Source of the DNA: Perna viridis
Taxonomy: Eukaryota
Assembly: GCA_037379345.1 (NCBI GenBank)
Contig: CM074524.1
Coordinates: 32,621,644-32,685,643 of the forward strand
Length of the DNA: 64,000 nucleotides
Reading direction: 5' to 3'
Below are positions 8,578 to 14,887 of the stretch, in pieces. Below the pieces are notes generated by a model that worked only from the letters and a program-made list of their open reading frames with translations, was not told the origin of the DNA and did not search any database. The first letter of the stretch is position 1. Every line of letters starts with the position of its first letter. Position numbers and translations under genes: made by a program.

Positions 8578-9525
8578 ATGACAGGGGGTATCCACGGCTA
8601 TCACTGCGTCTGTGGAGGGCACGATACACACGGGAGTCGTAATACAGGCGGGGTGTACTCTTCTATTGCTTCAAAAACATACGATTCATATGTCGCCCCT
8701 GTAAAGGAGGACTGTCAATATTATTCCACTGACTATTATGTCGAACCAGCTACGTGCGTTGGGACAGCTTTGATACCTCAGGATGCACAGCCTGTGACAA
8801 GAAGACCAAGTTTGGAGAAGAATTTAATTAAAACTACACGGCCTATGACAGGCACTAGCCGTATCAGGTTTCAACACGATTTTAATTGTGACTGCGGAGT
8901 CGTATGCTTGTCGTATCGAGAGCCTCAAGTAAAAACAAAACCATCACAACGGCCCCGTACAGCAAGCTATGGTCGACCAGTTCCTCGTGACTATCTCAAT
9001 TTTGTCAACGACGCAAGTTCCAAATATTGGCAAGTTATGGGAGAAAATAGTGCGAAGGGCAAGTTTTTCGATAGAAGCGCTCCTACCTACCATGGGCCCT
9101 GTTGCCAACGCTGCCATTGTCGTACTCGCAGCTCATCACCTTCCAGGTTAACCAAGTCTTACAGGACTACTTATGATGACGATTTTAACAGGACTTATAG
9201 GACGTCAAGAAACAATGGATATCTGGTCACTCAGCCTTCTGGTAAACACGGCGCATACTATACCGGAGCTGGTGGTTACAGTTCGTATTGGGTCCCTGCT
9301 GCAAAATATTCACAGCTTGCAAGCCAATTATATGCCAACAGACCAGTCCATGGATATACGTACAGAACCACATACAACGATGACTATAGCCGTCCTTCCG
9401 GGAAACGGGGGACTATCAGGAATTATTCATACCAATCAAATCCGAAGTTAGGTTCTAACTTTAGTAGAGGGTGCTGCTGTTGTAATTTACATGACCATGC
9501 GTTGAATATGATGTCACGATCATAG
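8578..9525 (+). CDS. Uncharacterised 315-aa Cys/Tyr/Arg-rich protein (paralog A) with YRTTYxDD[FY] motifs; candidate ciliary/sperm microtubule inner protein
   Basis: long ORF, GC/CpG-rich relative to flanks; tttgcag acceptor at 8571 then GTTGAG-ATG; AATAAA at 9747-9752; motifs shared with 14264-14887. Confidence 0.85.
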   Translation: MTGGIHGYHCVCGGHDTHGSRNTGGVYSSIASKTYDSYVAPVKEDCQYYSTDYYVEPATCVGTALIPQDAQPVTRRPSLEKNLIKTTRPMTGTSRIRFQHDFNCDCGVVCLSYREPQVKTKPSQRPRTASYGRPVPRDYLNFVNDASSKYWQVMGENSAKGKFFDRSAPTYHGPCCQRCHCRTRSSSPSRLTKSYRTTYDDDFNRTYRTSRNNGYLVTQPSGKHGAYYTGAGGYSSYWVPAAKYSQLASQLYANRPVHGYTYRTTYNDDYSRPSGKRGTIRNYSYQSNPKLGSNFSRGCCCCNLHDHALNMMSRS

Positions 9526-11023
9526 AACCGGGTTACCATGACCTTCCAGTATAGCTGATTTTTGCTGAAACTTTAGTAGTTACATATGTGTATAGTCTAA
9601 TGTGCTTTTCATTGGCATGATTCAAAGTGATACTTTCAGTGCTGATTTCTATGTTGTTATCGAGTGTAATCACATTGACCATCTTCATTATTTTTTACTT
9701 TCAATTTGTTTATTTTTCGAATGGGTTCCTTAGTTTCTTTGAACAAAATAAAGTAATTATAACTTTTGTCGTTGAATATACACACCGATGATATCGCCCT
9801 CGATCTCCCACTCTTACAGGGTTGCTGTTTATGCGACTGCAATTAATAGTTTTTCCCAATGCAACCATTTAGGAATTCGAGACCAAACAAGCATTTCATA
9901 ATTTTAACTCCCAGTATACTGTATGTAACAACATACTTGTATGCAGCTCTATAAAGTTTTACCACAAGGGTAAGACTGTGTTTGGTTTTGGGGAGGGGTG
10001 ATGACCCGAACCTTTTGGGAATTAGGAAGGAAAGGAGTAAAAACATTTTTTTTTTGGTTTCTGAAAAATAGCATGAGTAAAATATATGGATCTTTATGAA
10101 ATTGTACAACAAGGTATACCACAAAAGGATGTTTCAGGTTAATTTGTGTGTTTTGTTGTGATTATAATTGTTTCAACTGTTCGAGGTTCGACCTCTGTAG
10201 TCTTATCAAGCTGCGCCCTGAGAAGCATTTATACACTGATTATTTGTTTTATTAAACAGACAACCTCATATCGACAATGCTCCTCACCTAAGTTTATACA
10301 TTTATCCAATACTGTATACAATTTCTTGGAAATATTAAGCTTTTTAAGTCTGATCCGATCGCAGCGATCATAATGGAAGAGGGATGTCAACACGAATTAT
10401 TTTTCATATCATGACGGGTGGAATAATACGTAATTCCTGTGTCGTGGTAGGAAAAATACACTGTAAAACTAGTGACAGTCTACAATTATATACACAAAAC
10501 GCAAACAAATAACAGCAATAATAATCAATAATTATAAATTCATGCCTAAGATAATCGTCAAATTGCAAAAAAATAGGGATAAGATTTGTTAGCATTGAAC
10601 TTTTTAATTTAAATTTACCAATCTGATTACAAATGACATTAGTTCGACTTTTCTTTACAATATCAGTCAAAATTCACGTGACATCGTATAGCAGTGTGCC
10701 ATTTTCCGTGCTTTTGAGGTTCGTTGTTGTTGTACATGAAACACCTAGATAAATGAACGCAAAACTCCCCGACATCGTGCATAATTCAAATACGAACTAC
10801 CAGCTGGCCTTTTTCGGTTTCTAAACTTTCAAGTCGAAAATTAAATTAGCGAAATCCAGTTAGAAGATTAGAAGATGTCTGTCAAATTGCACAATTAGTC
10901 TTCAAACCTTCCCGTCAGTTCTTAGTTCATAATGGTGTTATGCAATCGTCAGACGTGTCTTCATTCGTCTAAATGTTTGTTTTTTTTTTTTTTGTTTTGC
11001 TTTTGTTTTTTTATGGTTATTGC

Positions 11024-11173
11024 NNNNNNNNNNNNNNNNNNNNNNNNNNNNNNNNNNNNNNNNNNNNNNNNNNNNNNNNNNNNNNNNNNNNNNNNNNNNN
11101 NNNNNNNNNNNNNNNNNNNNNNNNNNNNNNNNNNNNNNNNNNNNNNNNNNNNNNNNNNNNNNNNNNNNNNNNN
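11024..11173. other. Assembly gap (150 N)
   Basis: run of N. Confidence 0.99.
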
Positions 11174-11252
11174 ATGGGTAAGAATATTTGTGGCCATAAA
11201 TTATAGAAGGTAACAAATCAGTATAATGGTGTAATGATAATAAAGGCTCGAA

Positions 11253-12587: not shown

Positions 12588-12600
12588 ATCACCAAGCAAC
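12588..12600 (+). promoter_or_regulatory. RFX X-box-like element upstream of paralog B
   Basis: ATCACCAAGCAAC about 110 bp before the ACG|GTAAGT donor (12712/12713) of a putative 5'UTR exon. Confidence 0.35.
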
Positions 12601-14263
12601 ATGAACAGGTTCTTAGCCGGAGAGAAATGACTGAACTATGCTAAAGAAATTACCTCGTCGCTGTAATAATAGTTCAGATATTTCAGATAAGGAGGATATA
12701 GGCCAGCAAACGGTAAGTTTATATATTTTTTTTTAATTTTGATTTCTCATGTGAATTGCTTTCAGTTGTATAGCGGACTTGAAATGAAACTTAAATTTTA
12801 AATGATGTTAGTTATGATGTAAGCATTTTAATTGCCCTTCTAAGTTTCCGTACATACTACATGAACATATTCTGCACAATATTAGTACTCGATGGTGGAT
12901 CGCAAGGGGACAGGGGTCCCGTGGAATATCCCCGTTTGTTGAATTCGTGCAAAATAGGAGTAAACATTAGGACAAGAAACCAGGAAATCTCTGGATCTAC
13001 CCATGATCCACACGTTGTGGTCGAAATGAATAGTTGAAAAATCCCTCTTTCTTCATAGATAAAACAGACACACGGACAGAAAATGCATAGCAAGCATACA
13101 AACAAAATCGTGTAAAATCTCTTTTCCTGTTATACATTTTGTACAGCAAAGTATTTTGTTTTAATAAGTGTTCGTATATATTTTACACACTATTCCTTCA
13201 ACAGTTACATGTATAAGAAACAATAAACACACAACTTTACTGGAATACAGGATAATCGAAAGCGTCAAATAGAACGTATTTCATCAGAAAAGCAATTAAG
13301 AGCGGCCAATGAACTGTGCGATTCCAGCTTCTCTTTGCTAATATAATTTTGAAAAAAAAATCGTGTTTCATATTTTGTTGACTAAAAAAACATGAACCCA
13401 ACACGGTAATATAATTTGCCCTCATTAACAATTGTTGCGTTGATGGTGGTGGTACGTGGCAGTAACTATAAAATAGGGCATCTAATAGGGCATGCAATGA
13501 TAACCCGCCACAGTGTTTTAGCTAGACTCCATAAAACCCCGAAGAACAAACTTTCTCAGTTCTTTCATATTCAAAGAAAAATAACTCCAATTCATAAAAA
13601 AACAAACAAAAACAAAAAAATCAATAATAAAAAAAAAAAAAAAAACACAACAACAACAACAAATTTTTGAAGTAAAAATAGCTTAAAATGCGTAAATTTT
13701 GTGTAAATATTCCGATCAAATTGAAATTCAAACTTAATCTGTATTTTATGATACTCAATACTAAGTTTGGAAAAGATCATTCCATATCTTAAGTTATCAT
13801 GTAGAAACCGCTGGATGACCGACATCACGGACGAACGGACGGGCATACGGACACGCAACTGTTTGGAGGGCATCACATAAACCCTCATTACAATTCAGTG
13901 TGATAGGGTAGAAGATATCCCAGATTAATTTGACCGTGTCGAACGTCAGTGTCAACATACCCTGATTATTAGTTTAAGAGATTTTGAACAAACACGAAAT
14001 AAGCGGTAGTACAAATAAGTCTTAGCTGTTTGTTATAAACATGCCCATACTCTAAGGGTAACTCAATATTTTGTAGATTGGTTGAGGAATAAATGAACAA
14101 AAACGTATATAAGGAATTGATTGTTTGTTATTTTGGACGATTTTACAGAGTATTACAAGTGATATGAGTGCAATATAAGCTTGTTTGAATTTCAACAATA
14201 AGGTGTTTTTGATTTTATCAAACAATGTTCTCTTTTTCATATGAAAGGTTGAATCGTTTGGAT

Positions 14264-14887
14264 ATGGAATATGAGTATATTACGGAAGGTCTGGGATATG
14301 ACTGTGTGTGTGGTGGACATGACTCGTACGGCGGAAGACAATATGATGTGGGCTCCAAATACAACTCGCTAATTGACTGTCAGACCCAAGGTCAGGATAC
14401 AAGTACGAGAATATTTGACACTGTCAATTCGTACTCTAATGCATACTTATTAGAAGAAAACTTACGTTACCGACTACAGGAGGACCTGGAATATACTTGT
14501 GACAGAGTTTATGATGAACAACAGCAATGTGGTGGATACCTGCAAGGATCCCATAATGGAGGCTACCATTTAGAGGAGGCAACTAGTCGGAACTACGACG
14601 GTCGAAACTTTGAAACTTACCAAAATTTCGACATCGGTCAAAACTATGAAGATGGAGTGGATTTTTCAAAAGTTTTACAAGTTCTTGACGAATATCGAGG
14701 AAACATCTCCGGTAATGAATATTCTGGTACAGGCGGGGGAGGTTGTTGTTGCAAGGCATGTTCAACCGGACAGGGGATGGCGTACAGAACGACTTATAAT
14801 GACCATTACAGGATTGGTGGGAGCGCAGAGCAAGTCAGTAAGCCATCAAAGAAGCTTTCGGATAGGTGTATATATGATATTGGGTAA
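14264..14887 (+). CDS. Uncharacterised 207-aa Tyr/Gly/Asp/Cys-rich protein (paralog B)
   Basis: acceptor aag|GTTGA at 14247/14248 like paralog A; GYDCVCGGHDSYG, GCCCKAC and YRTTYNDHY motifs; the stop codon overlaps a GTAAGT donor, so the 3' end is uncertain. Confidence 0.8.
   Translation: MEYEYITEGLGYDCVCGGHDSYGGRQYDVGSKYNSLIDCQTQGQDTSTRIFDTVNSYSNAYLLEENLRYRLQEDLEYTCDRVYDEQQQCGGYLQGSHNGGYHLEEATSRNYDGRNFETYQNFDIGQNYEDGVDFSKVLQVLDEYRGNISGNEYSGTGGGGCCCKACSTGQGMAYRTTYNDHYRIGGSAEQVSKPSKKLSDRCIYDIG

What the first reader, a model, noticed from the sequence alone, without database searches (positions are those of the whole stretch)
8578..14887. Tandem pair of unnamed paralogs with a GYxCVCGGHD head and YRTTYxDx[YF] motifs: candidate new family of ciliary/sperm microtubule inner proteins
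Seen: the two ORFs are unalignable over most of their length, yet both keep GY[HD]CVCGGHD[TS]xG (8596-8625; 14294-14323), YRTTY[DN]D[DH][FY] (9160-9186, 9361-9387; 14783-14809) and a GCCC cluster. Their gene structure is also the same: a short 5'UTR exon spliced to an exon starting GTTGA just before the ATG. Known: [ST]TYxxD[FY] is the core of the Mn motif used by SAXO/MAP6-type and sperm axonemal inner proteins to bind tubulin, and Cys-rich tails are common in sperm structural proteins. Inference: this is a lineage-specific duplicated family that binds the microtubule lumen and has a Cys/His (possibly Zn-binding or cross-linking) N-terminal module. I cannot match it to a named gene.
Basis: partly seen in the sequence, partly recalled or inferred. 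Interest (0 to 1): 0.8.

Follow-up and report, generated by a model that had tools for sequence, protein, structure and literature searches.

The report
ERICH3 long first exon and its duplicate
The two motif-sharing reading frames are real relatives, but the downstream one is the long alternative first coding exon of the cilia gene ERICH3, and the upstream one is a small, expressed, lineage-restricted gene related to that exon; binding to microtubules remains untested.

Summary
They are not chance: the back-translated head GY[HD]CVCGGHD occurs twice, and YRTTY[DN]D[DH][FY] three times, in the 723-Mb genome, all in these two frames.

The reading "two unnamed stand-alone paralogs" is half wrong.
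- ORF2 (14264-14887): its stop is only the TAA inside a GTAAGT splice donor. A 4.3-kb RNA contig joins a 5'UTR exon (ending 12712) to 14248-14883 and then to 20263. The conserved ERICH3 exons follow from there, with DUF4590 at 29.3-30.4 kb.
- Mytilus edulis annotates the same layout. One ERICH3 isoform carries a 206-aa first exon that starts with a C-x-C-HD head and ends IYDYG before PLATY. Other isoforms start MSQIHDG, and that short exon is also present here (19096-19115).
- ORF1 (8578-9525) is a real independent gene. Its mRNA is about 1.25 kb with AATAAA, and dN/dS is 0.07 against a 72%-identical sister-species copy. No Mytilus counterpart was found. It is most likely a partial duplicate of the long ERICH3 exon.

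The gap 11024-11173 is intergenic.

SAXO/Mn-type microtubule binding stays a weak lead: no PF05217 hit, hhalign E 0.79, and the TTY motif is absent from the Mytilus exon. The link to cilia comes through ERICH3. Interest is modest.

The parts
7866..7878 (+). X-box-like (RFX) site, 1 mismatch, about 90-100 nt upstream of the inferred start of gene 1
   Evidence: 13 sites with at most 1 mismatch in the 64-kb window. Suggestive only.
7964..8029 (+). Gene 1 putative short 5'UTR exon (donor AAG|GTGAGT after 8029); the start is approximate
   Evidence: Sequence. RNA contigs reach 441-494 nt upstream of 9000, i.e. 428 nt of exon 2 plus 13-66 nt. The junction itself was not seen.
8572..9766 (+). Gene 1 main exon. 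It begins GTTGAG before the ATG; the CDS is 8578-9525 (315 aa, pI 9.4); the 3'UTR carries AATAAA at 9747-9752
   Evidence: RNA contigs of 1213-1257 nt run collinear from 9000 to 9744-9771 in three runs from three studies. dN/dS is 0.07 against L008.
8596..8634 (+). Head motif GYHCVCGGHDTHG of gene 1
8947..9042 (+). Best-conserved block of gene 1 (32 residues, starting QRPRTA and ending WQVMG); 31 of 32 residues are identical in the sister-species copy
9100..9120 (+). Cys cluster CCQRCHC of gene 1
9160..9186 (+). YRTTYDDDF, Mn-like core number 1 of gene 1
   Evidence: Identical in P0002.
9361..9387 (+). YRTTYNDDY, Mn-like core number 2 of gene 1
   Evidence: It reads YKTTYNDAY in P0002. It is the top hhalign pairing with a SAXO Mn unit, at E 0.79.
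9472..9483 (+). CCCC cluster near the C-terminus of gene 1
11024..11173 (.). Assembly gap; intergenic
12588..12600 (+). X-box-like site, 1 mismatch, about 110-125 nt upstream of the donor of the ERICH3 distal 5'UTR exon
   Evidence: Suggestive only.
12695..12712 (+). 3' end of the ERICH3 distal 5'UTR exon (donor ACG|GTAAGT); the exon start is unknown
   Evidence: The 17-nt loose end of the X3 contig matches 12695-11 with one SNP.
14248..14883 (+). ATG at 14264; 206 codons plus 2 nt; phase-2 donor GG|GTAAGT
   Evidence: A 4291-nt RNA contig (X3, depth 43) covers 14247-14884 and has loose ends on both sides. No depth beyond 14884 in any run.
14294..14332 (+). Head motif GYDCVCGGHDSYG of the ERICH3 long exon
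14744..14761 (+). Cys cluster CCCKAC of the ERICH3 long exon
14783..14809 (+). YRTTYNDHY of the ERICH3 long exon
18129..18142 (+). The only perfect X-box consensus in the window, about 1 kb upstream of the short first exon
18898..18969 (+). Non-coding element conserved with Mytilus edulis (82% over 73 nt), upstream of the short first exon
19096..19115 (+). ERICH3 short alternative first coding exon (MSQIHDG; phase-2 donor GG|GTAGGT)
   Evidence: 87% nt identity to the Mytilus exon; the peptide is identical to the start of P0004 and P0007. No RNA evidence here.
20263..20356 (+). ERICH3 second coding exon (G|PLATYSSLTDRNL...)
   Evidence: The 30-nt loose end of the RNA contig maps uniquely to 20264-20293. 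83% aa identity to P0006 residues 203-238.
29299..30368 (+). ERICH3 exons that carry DUF4590 (29299-29412 and 30123-30368)
   Evidence: PF15257 scores 28 and 86 bits, both over the cut-off. 84-88% aa identity to P0006.

Best explanation
This is one gene plus one exon, not two genes. The downstream frame is the long alternative first coding exon of the ERICH3 orthologue, a cilium-associated DUF4590 protein. It is preceded by a 5'UTR exon and spliced in phase to the conserved PLATY...SLTDRNL exon. A second, short first exon (MSQIHDG) lies 4.2 kb further on, as in Mytilus. The upstream frame is a separate, transcribed gene under purifying selection. It encodes a 315-aa basic protein rich in Tyr, Ser, Thr, Arg and Cys, with no confident predicted fold. 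It is homologous to that long exon from the head motif to the exon-end motif. Inferred: it arose by partial duplication of the ERICH3 5' end (the intron-ATG junction plus the long exon) after the split from the Mytilus lineage. It then lost the donor, so translation runs a few codons on to a stop and its own poly(A) site. Inferred function: the shared module is a fast-evolving N-terminal targeting or anchoring region of a ciliary protein, in which only short linear motifs are kept. These are the N-terminal M-[ST]-G-G-[IL]...C-x-C-(GG)-H-D head, Cys clusters, and in this lineage YRTTYxDx[YF]. The stand-alone copy would occupy or compete for the same partner. Whether that partner is tubulin (Mn-like contact), a membrane (Cys acylation) or a metal is not shown.
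For: Shown. RNA junctions 12712|14248 and 14883|20263 lie in one 4291-nt contig. DUF4590 lies downstream on the same strand. Exons from 20252 to 40728 are collinear with Mytilus edulis ERICH3 at 66-94% aa identity. Mytilus isoform P0006 has a 206-aa first exon in the same position, same phase and same length class, with a C-x-C-HD head and an ...IYDYG end; P0004 and P0007 start MSQIHDG. The short exon is conserved here. Gene 1 mRNA contigs end 14-19 nt after AATAAA and read through the stop. dN/dS is 0.07 over 255 codons. Gene 1 against the own exon gives z = 8.7, while both are non-significant against the Mytilus exon. Both motif patterns are unique to this pair in the genome. Gene 1 has no homologue other than P0002 among 1.84 billion representatives, and none in the 10 kb upstream of Mytilus ERICH3. 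In all three cases the ATG lies 3-16 nt after a splice acceptor. Literature: ERICH3 is ciliary (PMC6848114).
Against: The gene 1 5' junction was not seen in reads. The direction of the duplication rests on one outgroup locus with only 10 kb of flank, and on similarity levels that gene conversion or shared constraint could also produce. The own and Mytilus long exons are not alignable by score (z = 0.6), so their orthology rests on position, phase, length and the two terminal motifs. Adjacency of gene 1 and ERICH3 spans a scaffold gap. Tissue identity of the RNA runs is coded, so expression in ciliated or germ tissue is unknown. No function was tested.
Confidence: 0.8

Rival explanations
1. One reading: the shared module is a SAXO/MAP6-like microtubule inner protein module. 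The TTYxxD[FY] units would be Mn motifs that dock on alpha/beta-tubulin in the lumen, and the CVC head would correspond to the N-terminal Cys motif of SAXO proteins. Gene 1 would be a new small MIP, and the long ERICH3 isoform a lattice-anchored form.
For: TTYDDDF and TTYNDDY fit the SAXO motif-2 core [TS][NT]Y..[ED][FY] and the minimal syntax [TS][TS]x4[YF] (PMC3280300, PMC10973386). SAXO motif 1 also contains CVC near the N-terminus (PMC3280300). Gene 1 is basic (pI 9.4) and has no confident predicted fold. The best profile-profile pairing with this genome's own SAXO places the RTTYNDDY segment on the Mn unit LTTFKRDY. The module is linked to a cilia gene, and X-box-like sites lie upstream of both 5' exons.
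Against: No PF05217 hit at E up to 10, while true SAXO genes score 99-110 bits elsewhere in the genome. hhalign gives E 0.79, probability 0.05%. There are only 2 and 1 units, 67 aa apart, against 6-12 units with 18-20-aa spacers. The PF[ED]G prefix of real units is absent. The minimal syntax is not enriched (P 0.14 and 0.36). Pro is 6% and 0.5%, against 11-20% in SAXO. The ERICH3 exon is acidic (pI 4.5). The motif is not kept in the Mytilus exon. There are no PDB sequence matches to MIP chains.
Confidence: 0.2
2. Reverse direction: a stand-alone gene-1-like gene is ancestral. A tandem copy was captured by ERICH3 as an alternative first exon in a mytilid ancestor, and the parent gene was later lost, or diverged beyond detection, in Mytilus.
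For: The long exon is an alternative first exon with its own 5'UTR exon and presumably its own promoter, lying upstream of a conserved short first exon. That layout is typical of captured upstream genes. Gene 1's start, MTGGI, is closer to the Mytilus exon's MSGGL than the own exon's MEYEYITEGL is.
Against: Gene 1 is much more similar to the own exon than either is to the Mytilus exon. No gene 1 homologue was found in any annotated proteome or in the Mytilus upstream flank. The short exon's end, IHDG, resembles the long exon's end, IYD[IY]G, which suggests that the long exon is old within ERICH3.
Confidence: 0.15
3. The head is an acylation or metal-binding signal. The N-terminal C-x-C, with the later Cys clusters, would be S-palmitoylated (as in the MAP6 N-terminus) or bind Zn, so that the long ERICH3 isoform and gene 1 are directed to ciliary or vesicular membranes rather than to tubulin.
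For: C-x-C within the first 15 residues, followed by HD, is the only feature kept in all three sequences. MAP6 N-terminal Cys residues are palmitoylated (PMC3280300).
Against: The AF2 model is uninformative (pLDDT 28). Only three possible ligands (C, C, H) are conserved between the two local copies.
Confidence: 0.2

Closest known systems
ERICH3 (C1orf173), DUF4590 / PF15257; Mytilus edulis isoform A0A8S3TS22 (P0006)
   Same: ORF2 is spliced to exons that match Mytilus ERICH3 collinearly, and these carry DUF4590. P0006 has a first exon in the same position, phase and size, with a C-x-C-HD head and an IYDYG end.
   Different: The long exon lies outside the Pfam domain, is not alignable by score between the two genera, and is uncharacterised. 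The YRTTY motif and the GG insert in the head are specific to this lineage. Gene 1 has no DUF4590.
SAXO/MAP6 family (PF05217; motifs 1 and 2 of Dacheux et al. 2012)
   Same: A Cys-rich N-terminal motif containing CVC, a T-T-Y-x-x-D-[FY] core, a basic pI and no confident predicted fold (gene 1).
   Different: No HMM or profile match. Only 1-2 units, with the wrong spacing and no PF[ED]G prefix. Low proline. Bona fide SAXO genes sit on another chromosome.
Short MIPs with one or two Mn units (CFAP95, CFAP107, SPAG8, CFAP68, SPMIP3, SPMIP6, SPMIP9, TEX36; Andersen et al. 2024)
   Same: Small, largely unstructured ciliary proteins that use isolated [TS][TS]x4[YF] units.
   Different: No NWE motif, no sequence homology, and no localisation data.
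New genes made by partial duplication of a parent gene's 5' end
   Same: The copy keeps the intron-ATG junction and the first coding exon, reads past the former donor to a nearby stop, and uses a new poly(A) site.
   Different: The copy is old (no DNA similarity outside one motif), 109 aa longer than the exon, and under strong purifying selection.

Membership tests
ERICH3 / DUF4590 | DUF4590 domain over Pfam's gathering score in the same gene | tested here: met
   Met for the gene that contains ORF2: PF15257 scores 86.3 and 28 bits at window 30123-30368 and 29299-29412.
ERICH3 / DUF4590 | ORF2's exon is joined by splicing to the conserved ERICH3 exons | tested here: met
   Junction 14883|20263 in a 4291-nt RNA contig. 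Only the first 30 nt beyond the junction are shown; the remaining 3.6 kb of that contig was not seen.
ERICH3 / DUF4590 | Collinear orthology with an annotated ERICH3 | tested here: met
   tblastn of P0006 maps residues 203-1353 in order to 20252-40728 at 42-94% identity.
ERICH3 / DUF4590 | Gene 1 carries DUF4590 | tested here: not met
   No Pfam family at E up to 10. Gene 1 is a paralogue of the N-terminal exon only.
SAXO/MAP6 (PF05217) | Match to the family HMM | tested here: not met
   No hit for either frame. Positive control: two loci on C3 score 99-110 bits.
SAXO/MAP6 (PF05217) | N-terminal motif 1, [GR][KT]CVC[ESR][LI]CTCGK[HC][KR]C | tested here: not met
   Only the CVC and a later G-x-H are shared.
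SAXO/MAP6 (PF05217) | Array of 6-12 Mn-like units with about 18-20-aa inter-repeats | tested here: not met
   Two core matches 67 aa apart in gene 1 and one imperfect match in the exon.
SAXO/MAP6 (PF05217) | Basic pI and proline-rich composition | tested here: inconclusive
   Gene 1 has pI 9.4 but 6% Pro. The exon has pI 4.5 and 0.5% Pro.
Mn-unit MIPs | Minimal unit [TS][TS]x4[YF], more frequent than chance | tested here: inconclusive
   The unit is present 3 and 1 times, but P is 0.14 and 0.36 against shuffles. The stricter core is present twice in gene 1 (P about 1e-4), but the two copies are an internal repeat and so not independent.
Mn-unit MIPs | Location in the microtubule lumen, or contact with tubulin | not testable with these tools
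   All tubulin genes of this genome are split, so only N-terminally truncated exons can be given by reference. No complex job was sent.

The most novel reading that the evidence does not exclude
The module is a mytilid-specific microtubule- or axoneme-anchoring head. Used as an alternative first exon, it would turn ERICH3 into a lattice-bound isoform. Copied as a stand-alone gene, it would have given a new small ciliary or sperm microtubule inner protein with convergent, SAXO-like architecture (Cys head plus Mn-like units).
Probability: 0.12. Interest if true: 0.55.

Novelty: new member of a known kind. Interest (0 to 1): 0.3.

Why it matters
The result corrects a likely annotation trap. A phase-2 exon followed by GTAAGT reads as a complete ORF, so the first coding exon of a named cilia gene was taken for an orphan gene.

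What remains is a clean, datable example of a new protein-coding gene made from the 5' module of ERICH3 and then kept under strong purifying selection. ERICH3 itself has no known molecular mechanism. A detachable N-terminal module that exists both fused and free, and keeps only three short motifs, gives an experimental handle on what the ERICH3 N-terminus binds.

This is of interest for ERICH3 and cilia biology in bivalves and for studies of how new genes arise. It is not a new class of system.

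Tried and rejected
- **Pfam and PDB sequence searches.** Pfam at E up to 10 found nothing for either frame. PDB sequence searches of both frames and of a DUF4590 exon found nothing.
- **Large protein searches.** The word-indexed searches and the full phmmer search returned only self hits and P0002. 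The word-indexed searches could not see long proteins, so the giant exon was used as bait to reach Mytilus ERICH3.
- **ESM Atlas.** No result.
- **AlphaFold2 of gene 1.** With a 4-row alignment the mean pLDDT was 28, so the model is unusable and no fold search was run.
- **hhalign of the family against this genome's own SAXO exons.** E 0.79.
- **SAXO motif-1 exon.** A search upstream of the two SAXO loci did not find it.
- **DNA comparison of the two loci.** Nothing beyond poly-A runs and one 22-nt motif match, so the duplication is not recent.
- **Gene 1 in Mytilus.** tblastn of gene 1 and P0002 on the Mytilus ERICH3 locus with 10 kb of upstream flank gave nothing below E 1.
- **Metagenome-contig scans.** Two scans (head motif; conserved gene 1 block) gave 0 hits.
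- **Similarity of gene 1 to the ERICH3 RPRTA region.** E 0.24 and not collinear; treated as compositional.
- **Tubulin co-folding.** Not sent. Truncated exons would make any outcome uninterpretable.
- **Spliced models.** In one local alignment script only, the single Gly of the split codon was appended for display.

Full report
**1. What is in the sequence**

Two + strand frames exist as described: 8578-9525 (315 aa from the first ATG after the acceptor) and 14264-14887 (207 aa).

BLASTP between the two aligns only the head (16/32 identical, E 4e-6) and the YRTTYND motif. A Smith-Waterman score of 87 lies 8.7 sd above shuffles, with 0 of 300 shuffles reaching it.

The head pattern, back-translated, occurs exactly twice in the 723-Mb genome. 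The YRTTY[DN]D[DH][FY] pattern occurs exactly three times. All are here, on the same strand, and the reversed-pattern controls give none. The shared motifs are therefore real and specific, and the order head, Cys cluster, TTY is collinear.

**2. The gap**

The Ns at 11024-11173 lie between the end of the upstream transcript (about 9766) and the 5'UTR exon of the downstream gene (ending 12712). No ORF and no RNA contig crosses them. Neither reading frame depends on the gap. Only the intergenic distance, and the scaffolded adjacency of the two loci, do.

**3. The downstream frame is an exon of ERICH3**

Reads and contigs of four runs were laid on 9000-14999. In run X3 a 4291-nt contig (depth 43) covers 14247-14884.

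- At its 5' side it carries 17 nt that match 12695-12711 (one SNP).
- At its 3' side it leaves the genome at 14884 and continues with 30 nt that map uniquely to 20264-20293, directly after an AG acceptor.

The "stop" of ORF2 is thus the TAA inside the donor GG|GTAAGT. No run shows depth beyond 14884.

In frame, the exon (206 codons plus 2 nt) continues as G-PLATYSSLTDRNL... Downstream on the same strand, PF15257 (DUF4590, the ERICH3 domain) scores 28 and 86 bits at 29299-29412 and 30123-30368.

That giant exon was used as bait and retrieved Mytilus edulis "DUF4590 domain-containing protein" P0004. tblastn of its longest isoform, P0006, maps residues 203-1353 collinearly to 20252-40728 at 42-94% identity.

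**4. The same two first exons exist in Mytilus**

The 90% cluster of P0004 holds three annotated isoforms. P0004 and P0007 start MSQIHDG|PLATY. P0006 has instead a 206-aa first exon that starts MSGGLDLGCTCHD and ends NRSIYDYG|PLATY.

In the Mytilus locus (L043) the long exon starts 3 nt after an acceptor and ends at a phase-2 donor. The short exon lies 1.7 kb downstream of it.

In the window the short exon is present at 19096-19115 (MSQIHDG, donor GG|GTAGGT), with 87% nt identity to Mytilus. A further conserved element lies at 18898-18969.

The long exons of the two genera are not alignable by score (z = 0.6). They do share position, phase, length, the N-terminal C-x-C-HD head and the [DN]R[CS]IYD[IY]G end. 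I take them as fast-evolving positional orthologues. That is an inference.

**5. The upstream frame is a separate gene**

- **Transcript.** Contigs of 1213-1257 nt from three runs in three studies run collinear from 9000 through the stop (9523-9525) to 9744-9771. That is 14-19 nt after AATAAA at 9747-9752.
- **5' exon.** The contigs extend 441-494 nt upstream of 9000. This equals the 428 nt back to the acceptor at 8572 plus 13-66 nt, which fits a short 5' exon ending at the donor after 8029. That junction lay outside the stretch laid and is not shown.
- **Differential expression.** Several runs of the same studies hold none of the words of this transcript, so expression varies between samples. 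Tissue names are coded.
- **Selection.** The only homologue in 5.8 billion clustered proteins, or 1.84 billion representatives, is P0002. It is 72% identical and comes from a cut 918-bp contig of another sample in the same study. Over 255 aligned codons pN is 0.18 and pS 0.73, giving dN/dS of about 0.07 with dS saturated. The protein is therefore under purifying selection.
- **Relation to the exon.** In the four-way alignment, gene 1's C-terminal LGSNFSRGCCCCNLHD pairs with the Mytilus exon's LGNKFANRS-IYDYG. Gene 1 therefore corresponds to the whole exon and then reads about 10 codons further to a stop.
- **Distribution.** No gene 1 counterpart lies in the 10 kb upstream of Mytilus ERICH3 or in any annotated proteome. 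Gene 1 is far closer to the own exon than either is to the Mytilus exon.

The simplest reading is a partial duplication of the ERICH3 5' end in this lineage, after the split from Mytilus. It is old enough that no DNA similarity remains outside one motif. The reverse direction (capture of a gene-1-like gene by ERICH3) is not excluded.

**6. Is it a SAXO/Mn-type microtubule inner protein?**

The literature gives three descriptions:
- the SAXO N-terminal motif [GR][KT]CVC[ESR][LI]CTCGK[HC][KR]C (PMC3280300);
- the Mn-like motif ...[TS][NT]YRS[ED][FY]... (PMC3280300);
- the minimal unit [TS][TS]x4[YF] (PMC10973386).

Points in favour:
- TTYDDDF and TTYNDDY fit both Mn cores; TTYNDHY fits the minimal unit only.
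- The head shares CVC with the SAXO N-terminal motif.
- Gene 1 is basic (pI 9.4) and AF2 finds no fold (pLDDT 28).
- The top hhalign pairing with this genome's own SAXO puts the RTTYNDDY segment on an Mn unit.

Points against:
- That pairing has E 0.79.
- PF05217 finds nothing in either frame, while it finds two true SAXO genes on another chromosome at 99-110 bits.
- Real units here read PF[ED]G-x-[ST]T-x-x-x-[DE]Y every 33-67 residues.
- The minimal syntax is no more frequent than in shuffles.
- Proline is low, and the ERICH3 exon is acidic (pI 4.5).
- The Mytilus exon lacks the motif.

Membership in SAXO/MAP6 is therefore rejected. "Works like an Mn unit" stays a 0.2 possibility.

ERICH3 localises to cilia, and the paper cites an airway-cilia proteomics study that found it abundant (PMC6848114). 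X-box-like sites lie upstream of both 5' exons, and the window's only perfect X-box lies upstream of the short exon. This is post hoc and suggestive only.

**7. Verdict**

- Observation: real. Gene model: half wrong. Named gene: found for ORF2. Function: untested.
- The finding is an alternative long first exon of ERICH3, already annotated but uncharacterised in Mytilus, together with a lineage-restricted, selected, stand-alone duplicate of it.

Noticed in passing
window 19096-19115 and 18898-18969: A short alternative first coding exon of ERICH3 (MSQIHDG) and an upstream non-coding element are conserved with Mytilus edulis at 87% and 82% nt identity. In contrast, the long first exon is not alignable at the DNA level.
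   Followed up: partly
window 7866-7878, 12588-12600, 18129-18142: X-box (RFX)-like sites lie upstream of the gene 1 5' exon, the ERICH3 distal 5' exon and the ERICH3 short exon. The last is the only perfect match in 64 kb. The window holds 13 sites with at most 1 mismatch.
   Followed up: partly
window 10085-10115 and 11554-11586: Stretches of 31-33 nt are shared with abundant unrelated RNA contigs (depth 25-70) in all runs, with loose ends on both sides. They look like fragments of a dispersed repeat or of common transcripts in the intergenic region.
   Followed up: no
G000:C3:52745700-52746563 (+) and 52756815-52757705 (-); loci L020, L021: Two divergently oriented SAXO1-2 (PF05217) genes lie 10 kb apart, each with a 332-333-aa exon of Mn units. 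Each exon ends with a C-P-C-[HF]-D-P motif, reminiscent of the CP motif described for the last Mn-like unit of SAXO proteins.
   Followed up: partly
window 55858-57636: A 592-aa open frame rich in Ser, Glu, Lys and Thr, with repeated SSSSSxSETETD units, lies downstream of the ERICH3 giant exon. It may be a further ERICH3 exon or the next gene.
   Followed up: no
window 8947-9042 against window 27133-27390 and P0004 residues 229-250: Gene 1's KPSQRPRTASYGRP resembles ERICH3's SRLQRPRTANSLSP (10/23 identical, E 0.24). The match is not collinear with the rest and is probably compositional.
   Followed up: partly
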